The notes under the pieces: model-generated
Told to the model about the DNA's origin: nothing
What the model saw: only the letters and a program-made list of their open reading frames with translations
Databases searched by the model: none
Shown: in pieces, positions 1 through 20,172 of the stretch
Layout: each line of letters starts with the position of its first letter
How positions within the stretch are numbered: position 1 is the first letter of the stretch
Translations under genes and position numbers: made by a program
Source: Phallusia mammillata
Taxonomy: Eukaryota
NCBI GenBank assembly: GCA_965637545.1
Contig: OZ281495.1
Span: forward strand, 7,874,001 to 7,938,000
DNA length: 64,000 nt
Direction of reading: 5' to 3'

Positions 1-310
1 GTAAAAACATCCTGCAACAGTAAGTAGGTAATACTTCACTTTTCCATTTTACAAACAACTGCAAATGAAATGCATGCAAAAACATTTCACTATTGCACAT
101 AAAAGTGTCACTATTGCACAAAGAAAGCGACCACAAGCCTGCCACAAATAAGAAAAAAGGCTGGCAACAAGCTCAACGTAACAAAACACTGCGCCGGTCA
201 TATGACTGGAAACTAATTGATAAGCATGAAATCTATAGTTAGAGCTTTGTTCTATAGAAATCAGGTGAAAGTGTGTTAGACCGAAAAAACACAGGCATGG
301 AAAAAAGTCA

Positions 311-3435
<3,125 letters not shown>

Positions 3436-4293
3436 GTTTTTTCTTTCCTTTCTTTGCAAACTGACGCAAATTCAAATGCACAAAACGTGTGTCTATGCCA
3501 ATAAACACGTTAAGAATGAACGAACACCACACAATAGACACCACAAATGTAAAAAAACGCCACGATAAAGCAAACCACAAAAAAATGCCACAAAGTCAAT
3601 TTCCGTGCCACGTTGCGTAGCGAAGCGGAACCATAAACATTTCTCCCAAATCGTTATGTCACAGTGAAATCGTATTTGTTTTGATCAATAATGGCTCGAT
3701 TTTAACCCTTTTCAACTACTTCTTCAAAGATTTTTTTCAAATTCGAAGAAAAAAACGTAATAGCCTTTATATGACTATATTTCAGGAAATAAGGTCGCTC
3801 AGTAAAAGAACACATAGCGACACTATTGCATTGAGCAATCAGCAATCGTTAACCGGATATAGCTGCGCAACGTAGAAACATTATGGAGCGCAAAATAGTA
3901 GAGGACACAATTGGGGCATCATGATTTAACTTGGTATAGTACACTGCATTACAAAGCGTTTGCCTATGTGTCTGGAGAACATTTCGACTGTTTGAACTAA
4001 ATTTTAAATCCAAAAACGCCTATATTTTGTGCTCAGGAACTGCTAATAGGCTAGCACCCAAACCAAAATAAAGAACAGAAGTAAGAAATGCACAAAGATG
4101 TTTGACGACAGGCAACAGTGCATACCATTGCTTATATTCCTACATTAATATTACCTATAGCAATAAAATAAATAGATAGCGGTCATAGTTTAAAGATTAT
4201 TCATACAAAACATAACATAAGTTTATGTACAATGGTGATGTAAAAAAACAGGAGTTTCGTACATCCGTAAAACATTTTTTACTCAGATGTTTA

Positions 4294-11828: not shown

Positions 11829-12547
11829 CTGGTCTGTTGTAATGTTGACCTTCAAATTTGCCTTGTGACGGCGTCTTTTGTGGCAGGGTAAAAATATGTT
11901 GTTCCAACTCTAATCTGTAACCGTGTGTCTGGGCGCCGCACAGCATTAAACAGCCGTGAAGGCATTTACAAATTCGTGTTGATGAATAGTAGGAAATTCA
12001 TTGCACCATGAAAAGAAATGTAGTAGGCCTTAAATATAGTTTAAATATATTGGCAGCGGCCAAAATATCTTTTTCTGGTATTCGGTTATGTGCATTGGCC
12101 AGTAGAATGGTAATAATTGCTTTTCAAATTATTGGTATTATAGTCGTAGTTTATCGTTAAACCTAAAAACAAAGAAATTTTTTTTACCTTATATAATATA
12201 CGACGTTTTATTTGTTCGGCCAAGTCAGCTACAGATATGCGAGAATCGATTTCATGCAACAAGCAAGATGTTGCATCATCTCTTAGTATTGGGCAAATGT
12301 TGCGAAATCAAATACTCATAAACAAAGATTTACAACTTGGTCGCGTTGCTACTTAATTCTTCCGCAAGGCAAGTCAGTTTGCTTTGATACTGCGACAATG
12401 CGATTACGTATTTATGTCTAATGCCAAAAACAGATATTACACATTTACAGATGTTTTTTTAATTGCTGAAATTGTAACTAAGTTACTTTCGTTTTCGTTT
12501 CCTCAAAAACGATTTTTCTGGTAACCAGATTTTGTGTATGTGCGAGA

Positions 12548-14169
12548 ATGTCCAAATTAGAGACGCACGGACCAACAAACGGTAAGATATAATGAACATT
12601 TTAATTCAAAAATTTGGTTGTTGAAATAATCGAAAAGTTGCTGCGAACACAAAAGTTCAGTCTGGTGCTCTGATTACTGCTGCAGGTGAGGAGTTTAGAT
12701 GAGAAAAATAAAGTGAAATTTCTTATACTCTCGTTTAAATGCCACGAATTCGTTTAAACTCGTAATTACTGTAGTTCACTCGTTTTTATAACACGCAGGT
12801 TGTTAATCCATCGGGTTTGCGTTTGCAAAGGCACTGTAATCGAAATAGAAAAGTTAAACAAGATTCTATTATAAAAAGTTTGACTCGATTCCAAACCATT
12901 TAGCCAAAAAACTTTGATTTTGGTCATCGATAGTTGACTCAGAGAGGCGACACAAGAGTGGTTTAAACTGGAAAAGAGTTTTTATTTGTTTCAATGCAAA
13001 ATCGGAAAGCGATCAAAGGTATGAGGAAGAACTGAGAAGAATTGAAAAGCAACGAGAGGAGTTAATTCAAAAAGCACGGCAGGATGAAGGTATTACTTCT
13101 CGTTTTTTTTTTGATGCAATATTGTCAATGTAAAGTGTGGATAGGACAGATCTGGAAAAAACTTCTAGTGCGAGAAACAGATTCTTTTATTGAAGCAAGT
13201 TAAATGCACGTTAGAAACGCGTATTTCTGTAGATATATCGACCAAACACAGATACAATAAAAAAATGTAATGTACCCAATTTTATTAGTCCAGGGCTTCA
13301 AATTGCTCAGATTGCAATCACAGTTAACTAAGCGTTGCAAAATTTGTGATTGGCAATTAGTAAAATAAATAAATAAAAGAACGGGAAAAAGGTCTAAAGA
13401 TGTCAAGATGTACTTCAACCATAGACGCGTACATTGTAAGACCAAAACGCAGAAATTTAAAGGCCAATGAGTTTGACGCTTATTGTACCTAAATGTTGAT
13501 ACACTTTTGCCTTCCTAAGGGACTCATCGTAGGCAAAGCATAGCCAGGGGTCGACAACTTATGGCACGGGTGTCAACTACTTTTTGACATAATTAAAACT
13601 ATCATATTGCTTGTTTTGAGTTTGTTATAAAGTCATGATAAGCCAGTATATACGTTCAAATCCGTCTGCTTTTGGATTACTATTCAAACATATGGCACAA
13701 AACAACCATTACAGTTAAATGTGTGTGCACGCAAAGTCATTATCAGTTTGACTAAACAAAAAAATTGGCACGCGGCTTTTGAAAGGTTGCCGACCCCTAG
13801 GATTTCCTTTAATAAACAAAGGCTCCTCAATTCCACGTAACACTATTGTTGCGTCTTTAATTGTCGCAATAAGTCCTATCGTAATTTCCCCTTTGTTTAG
13901 CTTGTCCCTTTACAATATCTCGTCTCCCAGCTCAATCTATATTGTCGAAGCTCAAAACAAATATTAACCTTGGAGTGCTTTAAACAGATCCTATTCATTT
14001 GAGGGCAACCGCTGAGGTCACACACAATGACGGAACCACCTCGGGGCATTTCTCGTTGTATGCTACCGCTCCGGATGATAAAGTGAAAGAACTTAAAGCT
14101 CAGTTACCGCCCTACGCACAAGTGTTCGGAAGGAGAAACAAACAAACAACATCAGAAATCAAGAAATAA
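12548..14169 (+). CDS. Small uncharacterised protein A, 123 aa, 3 exons, coiled-coil segment
   Basis: Exons 12548-12581, 12934-13089 and 13988-14169, GT-AG, phase 1/1, open throughout: MSKLETHGPTN-VDSERRHKSGLNWKRVFICFNAKSESDQRYEEELRRIEKQREELIQKARQDE-DPIHLRATAEVTHNDGTTSGHFSLYATAPDD... Confidence 0.6.
13545..13799. mobile_element. hAT-Charlie-like MITE in intron of gene A
   Basis: Termini CAGGGGTCGACAAC / GGTTGCCGACCCCTA. TSD not preserved. Confidence 0.6.
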
Positions 14170-14473
14170 TTTTTTTTCATTTTAACACAGATTTAAAATT
14201 ATGTTTCAAATTGTTTTCACTTATACCACATTAGATTTATTGCTTTGATTTTATTTTGTTTCGGGAAAAATTTAAAGCATTTAAACAAATTGCGTGCAAT
14301 TTTAATTGTTTTTCGACTGCATCATCTTTAGTGCTTATATGCGCACCGTTTTGCATTTTTCACCAATATGACGTACATATCGATACAGTTGGCAGCATGT
14401 GTATGAGAATTTTTTTGATTGCAGGTTGTATACTTAGGTATATAGTGGAGTGGTTAAGGCTAAAAACGCTGCA

Positions 14474-14937
14474 ATGAATTTTACATTTGCACCTACAGCA
14501 CACTTTGATTTGGACAGGACCAACAAAAGAGTCGAAGAAATTCACAAAAAAACGCTACAACTGAAACTAGAAACCATGCAGATTGAAGTGGATACCGTTA
14601 AGGCGAGCCAAGGTATTGGTTTAGTTCATTATATTGTCGCTACGTTTCTGGGCATTACATTTAAGATTACGACGCAACATTTGCATCAAAGACACAGAGA
14701 CAGTACTATTGTTTTTCTTTTGAACTACTAGTTCGATACCCTACATCATTTGTTTCAATGCCCTGTTTTCTCTTTAAAGGAAAGACTTCATTTTGTTTCA
14801 CTGGACCAGAATATCATGAAGACGGAACTATCACTGGTGAACCAGTTTTAGAAATGAGAACGTCTGGAACCGGTTTAAAACAAATCGCAAATGCCCTGAA
14901 ACAGCAACATCAATACCAAAGCTTGAAATACAAATAA
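14474..14937 (+). CDS. Small uncharacterised protein B, ~98 aa; 5' end uncertain
   Basis: Exon 14474 (or acceptor at 14499) to 14612, ..RTNKRVEEIHKKTLQLKLETMQIEVDTVKASQ, phase-1 GT donor. Terminal exon 14780-14937, GKTSFCFTGPEYHEDGTITGEPVLEM..KYK*. Confidence 0.55.
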
Positions 14938-15529
14938 TTTTAAAAAATCAAATGAAGGATTAAACAAAAATTCTTTGTATGCTACTAATTGAAAAAATAA
15001 TGCAATTTTCACCAAAACCAAATGTCTTACTTTTACAATTTTATTCTAAACAATATCTTTGTAAATATGCTACATTTACTGGAAGTGTTCTGTGAAAATC
15101 TCTCGTTATTGTGACGGCATTGTCTTTTGTGTTTTTATTTGATTTTAGGTTTATGTTCGTGTGTGTTAAACCGGATAGCTGTAAATCTATCCTACAGAAT
15201 GCAAAAAAAATGTTTCATAACCATTTTACATAACGAAGTCGTTTATTACGTAATTATGCCGCAAATTAACGTACGTTATTGGTTTTAGTTTTTCTGTTTT
15301 TCATTCAGTTTTTGTTTAATTCTGAATTTTTAACGCAAAATTTCAAACTTGCAAATGCGGCATAAAATAATTTTTTTTAAGGCCGGTTGTAAGTGTACGA
15401 CAGTGTTTCGAATTTCACGAAAATTTTAAAATTTTAAAAAATTAAAAGTTTTTGTGCTTTAAATTAATTTCTTATGTTTTTCTGTAAGGTTAACCATAGA
15501 TTCGGATTGAAACCTGTTGAGTGTAAAAA

Positions 15530-15896
15530 ATGGGAAATGGATCTGTAAAGCAAGAAATCGCCGAAGCGGAACACGAGAAAGCGCTGCAGGAATATAAAAG
15601 AGCACGTTTAGAGCAGGCTCACACTCAACTACAACAGGGTAAAAACTTTTGTTATTGTAAGGCTCTTAAGTTATTTTCGAACTTCTGTTTGTTTGTTGCC
15701 AGACCAAGTTCATTTGAGGATTAGAGAACCAAGAATAAATCATAATGGTAGAAGGGTTGGAAGACAGCAAGTCTACTACGATGGTCCAAACTACGCCCAA
15801 CCATATGCTTTAAAAGTAGTTGACATCAACAGTCGGGCTATGACATGGTACCAGCATCAAGCTATCGCACCAGAACAAAGATATTATCAAAATTAG
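15530..15896 (+). CDS. Small uncharacterised protein C, 100 aa, Met-Gly start
   Basis: Exons 15530-15638 (MGNGSVKQEIAEAEHEKALQEYKRARLEQAHTQLQQ) and 15703-15896 (DQVHLRIREPRINHNGRRVG..YYQN*), phase-1 GT-AG intron. Confidence 0.65.
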
Positions 15897-16369
15897 CGCC
15901 AGATGTATTCATAAAACTTGACCGCTAAATTGTTTAGCCTTTGATTTTTTGCATTTTGAAATCATTTTGTATGTGTATAGTGTGGGAAAATGTGCATTAA
16001 CAAGTGCATTAAAATGTGCATTAACTACTTGAAACAAATGACTTGAAAGATATTCGTAAGAACTACAAGCCATTAGTCCATTTACTGTTCAATTTTATTT
16101 TTTTAAACTAGTTAGTGTTTACTCGTATTTACTTCTTGCATTAGATTGAGTATGCACGTATTCCAATTTGCAAGTTTTGCGCACCCGTCTAACGGAACAT
16201 TGTTAGTATAAAGCATTTTCCATTTAAGCATGTTCAACGTTCTCCCGTATTTGACGAAAAAACGATTTCCTAATACGTTCTATTTTTGTATTAAATGATT
16301 TTGTTTTTTTACATTCCAGAAGGTTTATAGCTTTTGTGCTGTTGTGTAATTTTCCACTAAAGTTTTATA

Positions 16370-17329
16370 ATGGGAAGCGGAAGCAGCAAGAAGTTAAAGA
16401 AAGTCCGAAGGGAAGCTTGGAGACTTGAAGCGGAAAATCAACGCCGGGAGGTTGCGTTGCAGCGAGAAATACAAAGTATGGCCGCATTTTTTTGTTTTTT
16501 TTATTTTTACTTTTTTGTTTGTTTCTCATTTTTTGTGTAACGTTGTCAAAATGGGAAATGTGTTACCTTTCTGCTTAACTTTTTTTTTCTCCGAACTGTT
16601 TGCTTTCTATCAGTAATGGGGAAAAATGTGCTTTTAGCGGTTGAGTTACTTGTTATTCTACTTACCAAGGAATTTAAAAAAATGTATTTCCAAGCTGCAG
16701 TGCCGGATTAAGGCCGGGGATGCCCAAATAACTAGAAAAAATGTATTCCATACAATGGTAAGTTATTTCAGGTCTGGAGGGTGAATGAAGATAAAATATG
16801 GAATTATGTTGTACTATCTGTGCAGCATTTACTTTACTAAAAATGACGTTCAATTTCCGATTTCAATTCCGAGACACCAATACATTCTCAGTTATGATTC
16901 TTAGTAAAGTTTCTGTGGTGCCCTTAGATGCCCTATAACACGTGGTTACAATCTTGTTAGTTTAGTATTTTTTCCGGATGCTTTCTAACCCATTGCAGTT
17001 TGATTTTTAGTACTAATGTTTTATTGTTAAGGTACTTAATTGGGAACAAAATGGGGATATAGGGGCGGGTTGAAAACCTTGTGTGAACAATTCGATGCAG
17101 CAACTATCCACCACACAATGCTTATAATAACTTCAGCGTTTAACACCATTTAACACAAAAACAACTTTTTGTACATTAAGATCAACGAACTGAAATCACC
17201 CAAAGAGTCCAGGGAGGTCGTTACGTTCTTGATGTGAAATCAAACGCTCCCGATTTCATACAACTTGCTCAGAACTATGAAAATCAAGAAGGACCAGACT
17301 TACAACCATTTCTCCCAATAGAATATTAA
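16370..17329 (+). CDS. Small uncharacterised protein D, 84 aa, MGSGSS myristoylation-type start
   Basis: Exons 16370-16475 (MGSGSSKKLKKVRREAWRLEAENQRREVALQREIQ) and 17181-17329 (NQRTEITQRVQGGRYVLDVKSNAPDFIQLAQ..IEY*), phase-1 GT-AG intron. Confidence 0.6.
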
Positions 17330-19149
17330 TGATCGGCTCATTTACAGTAAATGACCCACAAAATAAACACTTTAAACTCTACTAAATGTGCATCCGAGTT
17401 TAATGTAACCTATTAATTTAGAATTTGATTTTCGTGTGTGTTCCAATATCCAGCAGGCGAGTTTCGTTTTCACTCGAACCCTTTTGGGTTCTTTTGGTTA
17501 AAATTTCAAACGTCTGTTTAAACGTCCGTCTGTTTACTTTTTTGGTTAAATTTTATTTTATTTTTTCAAACGTCCGTCTGTTTACTTTTTTGGTTAAAAT
17601 TTCAAACGTCTGTTTAAAAAATAGTTTTCTTTGTCGCAAAAGCAAAAAATAATGCTTTGTCAATTACAATAAAGATAATAGTTGTTCGTTTGAAACAATA
17701 AACCTATATACGGGGTCCGTTATAGATAAGTCTTAGAAACCACTGTTTTAGAGGGTAAAATGACGTCCATTTACCCCATACAACATTGGTTTCCAAACTT
17801 TCTACTGTTTCTGACTAATTTGCATCAAAACTTGTATGTAGCCCACAGTACTCAGTGCTATACCTATAACATGTTTTAAAACAACATTAACCTTGCCAAA
17901 ATAAACCAACAGAGAGCTTATGAAAAGTTAGAGAACTAGAGCAACCTTTTGCTGCTAACTGTTACTTGGGGTAGTTGAAGTTATTTCGTATCCGGCTTTA
18001 TGAATGCACGATTCGCATTCTTGTGTCGAAATGCTATTTCATTTCGGTGCTACATAAACCGGGCTAATTTTGTTTATTTCATTCAATTGATTTGTTCTCA
18101 TGTAAAATACAACACTAACGTTATATACTACTTGTACGTTTCTTGTCGCGTTAAACCATTCTGTTTAATGCTAGGTCTATACCAGTGGTTTTCAACCCGT
18201 GCGTCGCGACACCCGTGGGGGTCGTTTACCATTTTGCTGGTGGTCGCGCAGGCTTTTGATGAAAACATTAACAAGCAAAAAAGTGGTGTATACAAAACAA
18301 AGTGTTTTATATAGACTTGGATTTAACCGACCTGACATAACGCTCTAGGCTCTAGTTGGTTTTGTCCAGGTGAACCGCAGTCAGTGTATTTGCGTATAAA
18401 CCTTCATCACAACAATGTCTTTAGTGGCAGTAACTATAAACTCTTACAATCAACGACTATCTTGGTCAAATTTATTCAGAGCCGATAATTTTGGACTCTT
18501 CTACCGACGTTGCGTAGTTGGATTAAAAAAAAATAAAGATAAATAGACCTAAAACGCAGAGTATTTGGAATGCAACCAATTAGCAAATGCCACACTCGCA
18601 ACATTTTTCCAGATTTGCCACTCAAGCGTTTGATATACGTTTAGTTTATTTTAAATTTCAGAACTACGTATAACAATGGTTCATTAATAACAACATTACA
18701 TTATAGTTATACAATATGCATGCTATATTTGTGTAAAATGCAAAATAGGAAAAAAACATGAATGCAGAAACAATATTTGTAACAGCAAAAACCAAAAGAA
18801 ACAGTGGTGAAAATTTTGTAATTTTTATGTCAAAAAAGTTACGAATTCCTAACAATTAGACCACAATTCACAAAAACCAATGTTTCTACTTGTGTAATAA
18901 ACCTTTGGCGCTTCAAAAGACAAAAAAATGTTTTGAATATACTAAAAAATACACGAAAAAAGTATGATTTTCAGATTAGTCTAGTTTAAACCTGCCAACA
19001 AAAATCAAATGTTTAATTCTTTAAGTCCGTTTTCAAAAACTATTTACAATAAGTTTGAATATATTGTGCGAAGATATACATTTATTCCGTGTAAATAAAC
19101 AAACACATATTCAACACAGTCATCAGTTAAGGTCAAACGTGTTGCCTAC

Positions 19150-20172
<1,023 letters not shown>

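What the first reader, a model, noticed from the sequence alone, without database searches (positions are those of the whole stretch)
12548..17329. Tandem cluster of four unrecognised microprotein genes with a shared architecture
Four co-oriented genes (123, ~98, 100 and 84 aa), 0.3-0.6 kb apart, are mostly invisible to the ORF track because they are split. Each has a ~35-aa charged, helical or coiled-coil-like segment ending at a phase-1 intron, then a terminal exon with faint similarity: A DPIHLRATAEVTHNDGTTSG..APD, C DQVHLRIREPRINHNGRRVG..GPN, B ..EYHEDGTITG, D ..GGRYVLDVKSNAPD. C and D start MGNGSV and MGSGSS; D fits the MGxxxS N-myristoylation consensus and is followed by a basic patch (KKLKKVRR). 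I recognise no family. This may be a fast-evolving, lineage-specific family of membrane-tethered microproteins. Acceptor-like AG tracts upstream of the C and D starts would also fit a trans-spliced operon, as known in tunicates.
Basis: partly seen in the sequence, partly recalled or inferred. Interest (0 to 1): 0.7.

Follow-up and report, generated by a model that had tools for sequence, protein, structure and literature searches.

The report
Orphan sea-squirt myristoyl-signal small-protein gene cassette
The four small split genes are real members of one previously unannotated sea-squirt gene family (about 24 copies in two clusters). Most copies carry a lipid-anchor start signal, but their function and expression at this locus remain untested.

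Summary
Observation confirmed. All four models (A 123, B 98, C 100, D 84 aa) have the stated GT..AG junctions, and each last intron is phase 1.

They are not chance ORFs:
- The same A-B-C-D cassette recurs in a second array of about 20 genes on another contig (G000:C6, 25.38-25.46 Mb). Order, spacing and intron phase are the same.
- Two old cassette copies are alignable only at the exons, and pooled dN/dS is 0.27.
- A D-type gene with the same phase-1 intron lies in another ascidian (Logan contig from DRR090687).
- One RNA-run contig carries a B-type exon 1 joined to exon 2 exactly at the predicted junction. Its sequence is not in this assembly, so it comes from a relative of B.

The family signature is a start of MGxxxS type, then a charged helix, the phase-1 intron, and a roughly 50-residue beta-hairpin-plus-helix domain (R-x-x-x-K-x3-P-x4-DGT-x2-GQ).

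There is no Pfam, PDB-sequence or fold match, and only one unannotated hit among 1.84 billion representative proteins.

- D's last exon has lost the family motif; only its first exon scores.
- B here lacks the MG start.
- A's first exon is unsupported.

No transcript of these four genes was seen, and the operon idea is untested. Verdict: a real, lineage-restricted orphan family of moderate interest. Earlier notes of this scan report other orphan small-protein arrays in the same genome.

The parts
12548..12581 (+). Gene A, proposed exon 1 (start codon plus 10 codons, donor G|gtaaga, phase 1). Hypothetical.
   Evidence: The frame arithmetic fits. No conserved counterpart lies upstream of the A-type genes on C6. 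Some upstream phase-1 exon must exist, because A exon 2 has no in-frame Met and opens with a phase-1 acceptor in the window and in units u1 and u4.
12934..13089 (+). Gene A exon 2: charged helical segment with the conserved core KSES-D/E-x-x-YEEE..., ending at a phase-1 donor.
   Evidence: tblastn finds it in C6 units u1 and u4 at 42-59% identity. blastn between u1 and u4 aligns this exon at 75%. dN/dS between u1 and u4 is 0.09.
13988..14169 (+). Gene A terminal exon: hairpin-helix domain (IHL..., HNDGTTSG, APDDKV), stop at 14167-14169.
   Evidence: It is up to 67% identical to C6 paralogs, E = 7e-17. It scores 54.5 bits against a profile built without any window sequence. The AlphaFold2 model has pLDDT 79 and a beta-beta-alpha-beta layout.
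14474..14612 (+). Gene B exon 1: starts MNFTF (no MG), then a charged helix, phase-1 donor G|gtattg.
   Evidence: It scores 27.9 bits against a first-exon profile built from the C6 genes and L025; the best shuffle scores 8.4. The end of this exon (T-V-K-A-S-Q) has a counterpart (T-I-K-A-G-Q) joined directly to exon 2 in an RNA-run contig.
14780..14937 (+). Gene B terminal exon: domain with GPEYHEDGTITGE, stop at 14935-14937.
   Evidence: It scores 38.6 bits in the leave-out profile test. Run X3 record 4 (631 nt) matches 14791-14825, and its flanks read in frame across the predicted 14612/14780 junction.
15530..15638 (+). Gene C exon 1: starts MGNGSV, then a charged helix, phase-1 donor G|gtaaaa.
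   Evidence: It scores 17.2 bits against the outside first-exon profile; the best shuffle scores 7.3. C-type genes on C6 start MGGGPS.
15703..15896 (+). Gene C terminal exon: domain with VHLRIREPRINHNGRRVG, stop at 15894-15896.
   Evidence: Six C6 paralogs are 33-46% identical. It scores 25.6 bits in the leave-out test. The C type forms a clade with 100/99 support. The AlphaFold2 model has pLDDT 78.6 and shows a hairpin followed by a long helix.
16370..16475 (+). Gene D exon 1: starts MGSGSS, then the basic patch KKLKKVRR and a charged helix, phase-1 donor A|gtatgg.
   Evidence: It scores 23.9 bits against the outside first-exon profile; the best shuffle scores 9.7. It shares the D-type signature (L-x-x-EN-x-RE-[IV]-x-L-x-R) with C6 gene D_u1 and with the other-species gene on L025.
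17181..17329 (+). Gene D terminal exon: divergent, the P...DG..G loop is missing, stop at 17327-17329. An AATAAA lies at 17362-17367.
   Evidence: It has no paralog hit in the genome and scores 0.7 bits in the leave-out test. Only the exon start (QRTEI, against QRRTKI in C6 D-types) and the intron phase agree with the family.
12515..12528 (+). Acceptor-like pyrimidine tract plus AG, 19 nt upstream of the A model's ATG. Candidate trans-splice or 5'-UTR acceptor.
   Evidence: Read directly from the sequence. Not tested with RNA.
14410..14424 (+). Acceptor-like tract (tttttttgattgcag), 49 nt upstream of the B ATG.
   Evidence: Read directly from the sequence. B-type genes on C6 have ..acag|g 39-44 nt upstream of their ATG. 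Not tested with RNA.
15474..15488 (+). Acceptor-like tract (tgtttttctgtaag), 41 nt upstream of the C ATG.
   Evidence: Read directly from the sequence. All four C-type genes in C6 units u1-u4 have the block TTG-Y-TGTGTT-N-CAG|CT at -51. Not tested with RNA.
16300..16319 (+). Acceptor-like tract (tttgtttttttacattccag), 50 nt upstream of the D ATG. An ATTAAA lies 24 nt before the AG.
   Evidence: This is the only window gene that passes the strict acceptor criterion. Not tested with RNA.

Best explanation
The stretch holds four independent, co-oriented protein-coding genes. All four belong to a single ascidian-restricted family of 84-123-residue proteins.

Shown: the family plan.
- The first coding exon gives an N-terminus of MGxxxS type followed by about 30 residues of charged helix.
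- A phase-1 intron follows.
- The terminal exon gives a roughly 50-residue domain predicted as a beta-hairpin packed on a helix. Its motif is R-[IVT]-x-[ILV]-K-x3-P-x4-[DN]-G-T-x2-G-Q.

Shown: the history.
- Four subtypes (A, B, C, D) lie in a fixed order as a cassette.
- The cassette is older than the split between this locus and a second array on another contig, where it was copied several times.
- The coding exons are under purifying selection.

Inferred: the mechanism.
- The B, C and D types are N-myristoylated on Gly2 and sit on the cytosolic face of membranes.
- In window D the adjacent basic patch would strengthen binding to acidic lipids.
- The helix would pair the proteins with themselves or with each other.
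- The hairpin-helix domain would be the partner-binding module.

Window-specific departures: D has lost the hairpin motif, B has lost the MG start, and A's true first exon is unknown.
For: - Splice arithmetic and frames hold for all four models.
- The family occurs in only two places in the 240-Mb genome: 4 terminal-exon profile hits in the window and 20 at G000:C6 25.38-25.46 Mb.
- The C6 array repeats the A-B-C-D order with 0.28-0.56 kb between coding sequences and the same phase-1 acceptor position.
- Cassettes u1 and u4 align by blastn only at seven exons (67-95% identity). Their introns and spacers cannot be aligned.
- Nei-Gojobori dN/dS between u1 and u4 is 0.08-0.36 per exon and 0.27 pooled (dN 0.139, dS 0.506).
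- Leave-out profiles recognise window A, B and C terminal exons and B, C and D first exons far above shuffles.
- In the tree, the C type including window C has 100/99 support and the A type including window A has 71/100.
- The outside homolog P0003 lies on contig L025 and has an MGNTYG start, a phase-1 46-nt intron and the DGTQTGQ motif. A neighbouring exon on L025 is 81% identical to this genome, so the contig comes from another ascidian.
- An RNA-run contig joins B-type exon 1 to exon 2 at the predicted junction. About 10 of its roughly 18 differences from the window are synonymous-type changes (counted by hand on 95 nt).
- MG starts: MGNDQS, MGGNQS, MGNSQS, MGGGPS, MGNGQS, MGNGES and others.
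- AlphaFold2 models of the terminal domain have pLDDT 78.6 and 79.1.
Against: - No contig of four RNA-type runs lies on any of the four window genes at 88% likeness or more. Expression of these copies is therefore not shown.
- The one spliced contig is only about 79% identical to window B, and its sequence is absent from this assembly.
- Myristoylation, membrane binding and oligomerisation are inferred from sequence alone.
- Window C (Val6), C6 B_x4 (Pro6) and C_x5 (Arg3) miss the strict motif.
- Window B has no Gly2.
- D's terminal exon is unrecognisable (0.7 bits) and has no paralog close enough to measure constraint.
- Several C6 copies are truncated.
Confidence: 0.7

Rival explanations
1. 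The cassette is an ascidian SL-resolved operon. A, B, C and D would be transcribed as one precursor from a promoter upstream of A, and each downstream cistron would receive the 16-nt spliced leader at the acceptor-like site 40-50 nt before its ATG. This would add to the gene-family reading rather than replace it.
For: - All four genes are on the same strand with 304-592 nt between coding sequences. Similar tight spacing is kept in the old C6 cassettes.
- A pyrimidine tract plus AG precedes every ATG by 19-50 nt, and the C-type block sits at -51 in all four C-type genes of C6 units u1-u4.
- ATTAAA lies 24 nt and 42 nt before the D and C acceptor-like AGs. That would fit the Ciona-type layout, in which the upstream poly(A) site abuts the downstream acceptor (PMC1488885).
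- The genome holds about 3,800 exact or one-mismatch copies of the Ciona leader plus GT, against 5 in the control.
- Earlier notes of this scan report verified operons elsewhere in this genome (not checked by me).
Against: - No RNA from this locus was seen, so there are no leader reads and no polycistronic contig.
- A strict acceptor definition is met by 4 of 14 family genes against a 12% background, P = 0.08.
- No A[AT]TAAA lies just before the B acceptor-like site.
- The B-type mRNA contig looks monocistronic: about 44 nt of 5' UTR and about 290 nt of 3' UTR, estimated.
- Part of the leader count comes from LINE elements that begin with the leader.
- In the other ascidian the gene stands alone on its 2.4-kb contig.
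Confidence: 0.2
2. The four models are exons or alternative terminal exons of one larger transcription unit, not separate genes.
For: All introns are phase 1, so a first exon of one unit could in principle join the terminal exon of another and stay in frame.
Against: - Each unit has its own conserved ATG with an MG start and its own stop at a conserved place in every cassette.
- The RNA contig joins B exon 1 to B exon 2 and is only 631 nt long.
- In the other ascidian a single unit stands alone.
Confidence: 0.05
3. The window copies are chance ORFs or decaying pseudogenes with no protein product.
For: - No transcript of the window copies was seen.
- D's terminal exon has lost the family motif.
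- B has lost the MG start.
- Some C6 copies are truncated.
Against: - All four window models keep an intact ATG, donor, acceptor and stop.
- A, B and C score 25-55 bits against outside-only profiles.
- Family exons show dN/dS of 0.27 while the non-coding DNA between them is no longer alignable.
- Between window A and A_u4, dN/dS is 0.24.
Confidence: 0.07
4. The family is a very diverged branch of an already described family of small myristoylated or coiled-coil proteins that the searches here could not detect.
For: The proteins are short and evolve fast. The full-length spliced models could not be searched or folded as a whole, so weak whole-protein signals may have been missed.
Against: - Pfam gives no hit below E = 0.05 for any exon.
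- The PDB sequence profile search gives nothing below E = 0.005, and its only hits are designed repeat proteins.
- Foldseek gives no match at E <= 0.001 (best E 0.45-0.84). VIA-align gives a best Z of 4.2 and 3.2 for the two domain models.
- A profile search of 1.84 billion representative proteins gave one credible hit, itself unannotated.
- Two word-index profile searches added nothing.
- The ESM Atlas gave no usable lead.
Confidence: 0.08

Closest known systems
Small N-myristoylated membrane adaptors with a basic patch (Src SH4 motif MGSNKSK..., MARCKS, BASP1). Recalled from general knowledge, a lead only.
   Same: An MGxxxS start is present, and in window D it is followed at once by a Lys/Arg cluster. 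One C6 copy even starts MGSNKS. This two-signal design (myristate plus basic residues) is the established way such proteins bind the inner leaflet.
   Different: There is no sequence relationship: no Pfam hit to any such family. The rest of the protein (short charged helix plus hairpin-helix domain) is unlike them. The C types are acidic after the MG start.
Ciona-type SL trans-spliced operons (PMC1488885)
   Same: The genes are co-oriented and closely packed in an ascidian genome that carries the same 16-nt leader. An acceptor-like site lies shortly before each ATG.
   Different: Described Ciona operons have no intercistronic DNA and mostly hold unrelated genes. Here the coding sequences are 0.3-0.6 kb apart, the genes are paralogs, and no leader read or polycistronic RNA was seen.
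Other orphan small-protein tandem arrays noted in this same genome by this scan (notes s1-358924 and s1-399076; unchecked AI notes)
   Same: These are also taxon-restricted families of short proteins in head-to-tail arrays with no known domain.
   Different: They have different sequences and architectures. This family has four ordered subtypes that move together as a cassette, a conserved MG start and a phase-1 intron.

Membership tests
The family defined here (MG-start, helix, hairpin-domain small proteins) | The terminal exon carries the domain motif R-x-x-x-K-x3-P-x4-[DN]-G-x3-G and scores against a profile built without the sequence under test. | tested here: met
   Met for window A (54.5 bits), B (38.6) and C (25.6). 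Not met for D (0.7 bits).
The family defined here (MG-start, helix, hairpin-domain small proteins) | A phase-1 intron sits directly before the domain exon. | tested here: met
   Found in all four window genes, in the 15 of 17 C6 terminal exons where a canonical AG acceptor could be placed, and in L025.
The family defined here (MG-start, helix, hairpin-domain small proteins) | The first coding exon is a charged helix that an outside-only profile recognises. | tested here: met
   B 27.9, C 17.2 and D 23.9 bits, against a best shuffle of 9.7 or less. A-type exon 2 is a different helix exon (-1.0 bits) but is conserved among the A types.
N-myristoyltransferase substrates (pattern G-{EDRKHPFYW}-x(2)-[STAGCN]-{P} after Met removal; PROSITE PS00008, recalled from knowledge) | Gly at position 2. 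| tested here: met
   Met for window C and D and for all 13 other B/C/D-type first exons recovered (12 on C6, one on L025). Not met for window B (MNFTF) or the A model (MSKLE).
N-myristoyltransferase substrates (pattern G-{EDRKHPFYW}-x(2)-[STAGCN]-{P} after Met removal; PROSITE PS00008, recalled from knowledge) | A small or hydroxyl residue at position 6 and a permitted residue at position 3. | tested here: inconclusive
   Window D (MGSGSS-K) passes. Window C (MGNGSV) fails at position 6. Twelve of the 15 MG-start first exons pass.
N-myristoyltransferase substrates (pattern G-{EDRKHPFYW}-x(2)-[STAGCN]-{P} after Met removal; PROSITE PS00008, recalled from knowledge) | Covalent myristate on Gly2 in vivo. 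| not testable with these tools
   This needs metabolic labelling or mass spectrometry.
Ciona-type SL-resolved operon (PMC1488885) | Same-strand neighbours with no or very short intercistronic DNA, the upstream poly(A) site lying at the downstream acceptor. | tested here: inconclusive
   The genes share a strand. The gaps between coding sequences are 304-592 nt, and the 3' ends are unknown. ATTAAA lies 24 and 42 nt before two of the three acceptor-like AGs, and none lies before the third.
Ciona-type SL-resolved operon (PMC1488885) | Downstream cistrons carry the spliced leader at an unpaired acceptor. | not testable with these tools
   The single reads call showed no RNA on the locus. The leader itself is abundant in the genome.
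Any Pfam family or solved structure | A significant sequence or fold match. | tested here: not met
   Pfam was searched exon by exon. The PDB sequence profile gave nothing. Foldseek and VIA-align were run on two models. Full-length joined models were not searched.

The most novel reading that the evidence does not exclude
The A-B-C-D cassette encodes four subunits of one membrane-tethered hetero-oligomer. It would be kept together, and copied only as a unit, because the four genes are co-expressed from a single SL-resolved precursor. That would make it a chordate operon of paralogous, functionally coupled microproteins, unlike the mostly unrelated gene pairs of known ascidian operons.
Probability: 0.1. 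Interest if true: 0.7.

Novelty: new variant of a known kind. Interest (0 to 1): 0.42.

Why it matters
- It adds about two dozen unannotated protein-coding genes to an ascidian genome. It shows that split small genes missed by ORF tracks can be validated from paralog structure alone.
- The family couples a conserved lipid-anchor signal to a small domain with no fold match here, and its four subtypes travel as an ordered cassette.
- If expression and myristoylation are confirmed, it would be a tractable example of how taxon-restricted membrane-associated microproteins arise and diversify in a chordate.
- It would also be a natural test case for whether paralog cassettes are held together by operon-type transcription.
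- As it stands the function is unknown, and similar orphan arrays seem common in this genome, so the interest is moderate.

Tried and rejected
1. RNA support at the locus. One runs search found only two DNA-type holders. I laid contigs of four RNA-type runs from four studies at 88% likeness. Nothing lay on the genes except a 35-nt piece of a diverged B-type transcript.
2. The B-type transcript's flank was searched in the assembly with up to 3 mismatches and is absent. It is therefore not a hidden paralog of this assembly.
3. Word-index protein searches with two family alignments returned nothing, or only P0003.
4. In the profile search of 1.84 billion representatives, five of the six hits are repeat proteins matched through short DG/NG repeats. 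I rejected them after reading the sequences.
5. Pfam, the PDB sequence search, the ESM Atlas (twice), Foldseek (twice) and VIA-align wide (twice) gave no credible relative.
6. Synteny. The neighbour gene of the L025 homolog maps to G000:C6 10.715 Mb, but no family member lies within 20 kb there. The window's flanking genes have no copies beside the C6 array.
7. A conserved first exon for the A type was not found.
8. bZIP/CRE-like and TATA-like motifs upstream of the genes were inconsistent in presence and spacing. They were not used as evidence.
9. Acceptor enrichment under a strict rule was not significant.
10. Word-based literature searches gave nothing relevant on such a family. The run accession DRR090687 appears in no paper held.
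11. The joined (spliced) full-length proteins were not searched or folded.

Full report
**What is there.**
The window is AT-rich (about 35% G+C). By its content it is eukaryotic.
- I re-derived the four models from the sequence.
- Each model starts at an ATG. Each ends at a stop.
- The sizes are A 123 aa (three exons), B 98 aa, C 100 aa and D 84 aa (two exons each).
- The intron before each terminal exon is phase 1. The introns are 352 and 898 nt (A), 167 nt (B), 64 nt (C) and 705 nt (D).
- The gaps between coding sequences are 304, 592 and 473 nt.
- Taken exon by exon, none of the pieces hits Pfam below E = 0.05.

**A second array shows these are real genes of one family.**
Translated searches of the whole 240-Mb assembly with the terminal exons of A, B and C each found several paralogs. 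All of them lie in one place, G000:C6 25.38-25.46 Mb, on the minus strand. D's terminal exon found nothing.

I fetched 100 kb there and mapped all exons.
- The region holds repeated cassettes in the same A, B, C, D order. The best preserved are u1 (25457.4-25451.8 kb) and u4 (25394.8-25391.8 kb). Units u2, u3 and partial units also exist.
- The gaps between coding sequences are 0.28-0.56 kb.
- In 15 of the 17 terminal exons a canonical AG acceptor sits two bases before the first full codon, which is the same phase-1 position as in the window; the other two (C_x1, C_x5) show AG a few bases further upstream.
- A profile of 20 terminal exons finds 24 places in the genome: 4 in the window and 20 on C6, and none elsewhere.
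- All four subtypes share one motif, R-[IVT]-x-[ILV]-K-x3-P-x4-[DN]-G-T-x2-G-Q (alignments A1 and A3). A, B, C and D are therefore paralogs.

**Selection.**
- Cassettes u1 and u4 align by blastn only at seven exons (67-95% identity). Their introns and spacers are no longer alignable.
- Nei-Gojobori dN/dS for these exons is 0.08-0.36, pooled 0.27 (dN 0.139, dS 0.506).
- Window A against A_u4 gives 0.24. B and C against C6 are saturated at synonymous sites.

**Independent recognition of the window genes.**
- Against a profile built only from C6 and the outside homolog, the window terminal exons score A 54.5, B 38.6, C 25.6 and D 0.7 bits. The best of 200 shuffles is 6.4 or less.
- Against an outside-only first-exon profile, B scores 27.9, C 17.2 and D 23.9 bits. 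The best shuffle is 9.7 or less.
- D is therefore a family member by three features: its first exon (D-type signature ...L-x-x-EN-x-RE-[IV]-x-L-x-R), its intron phase and its place in the cassette. Its last exon has lost the P...DG..G loop.
- In a maximum-likelihood tree the C type, including window C, is a clade (100/99). The A type, including window A, is one group (71/100). B and D are unresolved.
- At least the A and C subtypes therefore predate the separation of the two loci.

**Relatives outside the genome.**
- A profile search of 1.84 billion representative proteins gave six hits.
- Five are long repeat proteins matched through short repeats, and I discount them.
- The sixth, P0003 (64 aa, E = 4e-6), sits on a 2.4-kb Logan contig from run DRR090687 (L025).
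- Read directly, L025 carries a D-type gene. It has an ATG at 254 (MGNTYG...), a charged helix, a phase-1 donor at 359/360, a 46-nt intron, and a terminal exon with PVTRRDGTQTGQ up to a stop at 567-569.
- Another exon on the same contig is 81% identical to G000:C6 10.715 Mb. The contig therefore comes from a related but different ascidian.
- No family member lies beside that gene in this genome.
- Two word-index searches added nothing.
- The library holds mostly prokaryote-style gene calls. This sparseness therefore says little about how widely the family occurs among tunicates.

**Transcription.**
- The runs search found only DNA-type holders plus small RNA-type runs of the same species label.
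- I laid the contigs of four of these, from four studies. No contig lies on the four genes.
- One 631-nt contig of X3 (depth 20.7) matches 14791-14825 in B's terminal exon.
- The 30 letters before the match read T-I-K-A-G-Q-G-R-T-S in frame. That is the end of B exon 1 (T-V-K-A-S-Q), the split Gly codon, and the start of exon 2 (K-T-S), with no intron between.
- The 30 letters after the match continue the frame (S-V-T-G-Q-S-V-L-E).
- Over the 95 known letters the contig is about 79% identical to the window. About 10 of the roughly 18 differences are synonymous-type changes (my hand count).
- The flank is absent from this assembly with up to 3 mismatches.
- This is therefore a spliced message, or a copy of one, from a B-type gene of another haplotype, individual or close species. 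It confirms the intron position but not expression of the window copy.
- Its layout looks monocistronic: about 44 nt before the coding sequence and about 290 nt after it.

**The lipid-anchor signal.**
- Leaving window B aside, all 15 B/C/D-type first exons recovered begin MG: window C and D, 12 on C6 and one on L025.
- Twelve of the 15 have Ser at position 6, for example MGGGPS, MGNDQS, MGGNQS, MGNGQS and MGSNKS.
- Window D (MGSGSS followed by KKLKKVRR) fits the classic myristate-plus-basic design.
- Window C has Val at position 6. Window B starts MNFTF.
- The A types have no in-frame Met in their helix exon. That exon opens with a phase-1 acceptor in the window and in u1 and u4, so a further upstream exon exists.

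**Fold.**
- AlphaFold2 was run on the terminal-exon alignments.
  - For C: strands at 3-7 and 22-26, then a helix at 29-53 (pLDDT 78.6).
  - For A: the same hairpin, a shorter helix and a third strand (pLDDT 79.1).
- Foldseek against the PDB gave no match at E <= 0.001 (best E 0.45-0.84).
- VIA-align against 48,161 chains gave a best Z of 4.2 and 3.2, below the tool's own noise level.
- The PDB sequence search and the ESM Atlas gave nothing usable.
- The joined full-length proteins were not searched or folded.

**The operon idea.**
- The genome carries about 3,800 copies of the Ciona leader plus GT, against 5 for the reversed control. These include a 553-bp tandem array on C3 (leader sequence from PMC1488885).
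- Earlier notes of this scan say part of this count comes from LINE elements that begin with the leader.
- A pyrimidine tract plus AG lies 19, 49, 41 and 50 nt before the four ATGs.
- A conserved block ending CAG|CT sits at -51 in all four C-type genes of C6 units u1-u4.
- Under a strict rule only 4 of 14 family genes qualify, against a 12% background (P = 0.08).
- Described Ciona operons have no intercistronic DNA. Here the 3' ends are unknown.
- ATTAAA precedes two of the three acceptor-like AGs by 24 and 42 nt.
- I rate trans-splicing of the individual genes as likely and a true polycistron as possible (about 0.2). Neither was tested.

**Context.**
- The cluster is intergenic and on the plus strand. 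The flanking genes below are all on the minus strand.
- It lies between two NAD-epimerase (GDP-fucose-synthase-like) copies at about 300-3459 and 19150-20172.
- A fibrinogen-C-domain gene lies at 4.2-5.0 kb.
- A class I Trp/Tyr-type tRNA synthetase lies at 22.8-26.7 kb.
- None of these has a copy beside the C6 array.

**Verdict.**
- The reading as a lineage-specific family is supported. The membrane tether is plausible. The operon is open.
- This is a real orphan family with an unusual ordered four-subtype cassette, but there is no functional evidence.
- Earlier notes of this scan report several other orphan small-protein arrays in the same genome, and they name the species as Phallusia mammillata. 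I did not check the species name.

Noticed in passing
G000:C6:25382000-25458000 (loci L015-L022), minus strand: This is the main array of the family. It has about 20 terminal-exon hits arranged in repeated A-B-C-D cassettes, some truncated, and one inverted C-type fragment at 25448389-25448565 (+). A reverse-transcriptase-like ORF of 468 codons lies inside the array at 25429564-25430967 (-).
   Followed up: partly
L025:200-260: In the other-ascidian homolog, two exact TGACGTCA palindromes (CRE-like) lie within 50 nt upstream of the ATG. Window genes have only loose ACGT-core sites at varying distances.
   Followed up: partly
window 13762-13798: A 37-nt stretch inside A's second intron matches, with 4 mismatches, the interior of long unrelated contigs (3.7-4.2 kb) in three RNA-type runs. 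It is probably a short dispersed repeat.
   Followed up: no
window 300-3459 (-) and 19150-20172 (-): Two copies of an NAD-dependent epimerase gene of GDP-fucose-synthase type flank the cluster. Their N-terminal exons are nearly identical in protein sequence. The second copy looks much more compact than the first.
   Followed up: partly
G000:C3:11108338-11147465: The Ciona-type 16-nt spliced leader plus GT recurs here every 553 bp, presumably the SL RNA gene array. Genome-wide there are about 3,800 copies, many dispersed.
   Followed up: no
window 15992-16025 and 17440-17640: The short tandem repeat GTGCATTAACAA (2.8 copies) lies in C's 3' flank. Downstream of D, a roughly 60-nt unit (ggttaaaatttcaaacgtc...) is repeated by eye, but Tandem Repeats Finder does not score it.
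   Followed up: no
run X3, record 4 (631 nt), laid at window 14791-14825: A well-covered B-type transcript is about 79% identical to window B, and its sequence is absent from this assembly. This suggests copy-number or haplotype variation of the family, or a mixed species label among the RNA runs.
   Followed up: partly
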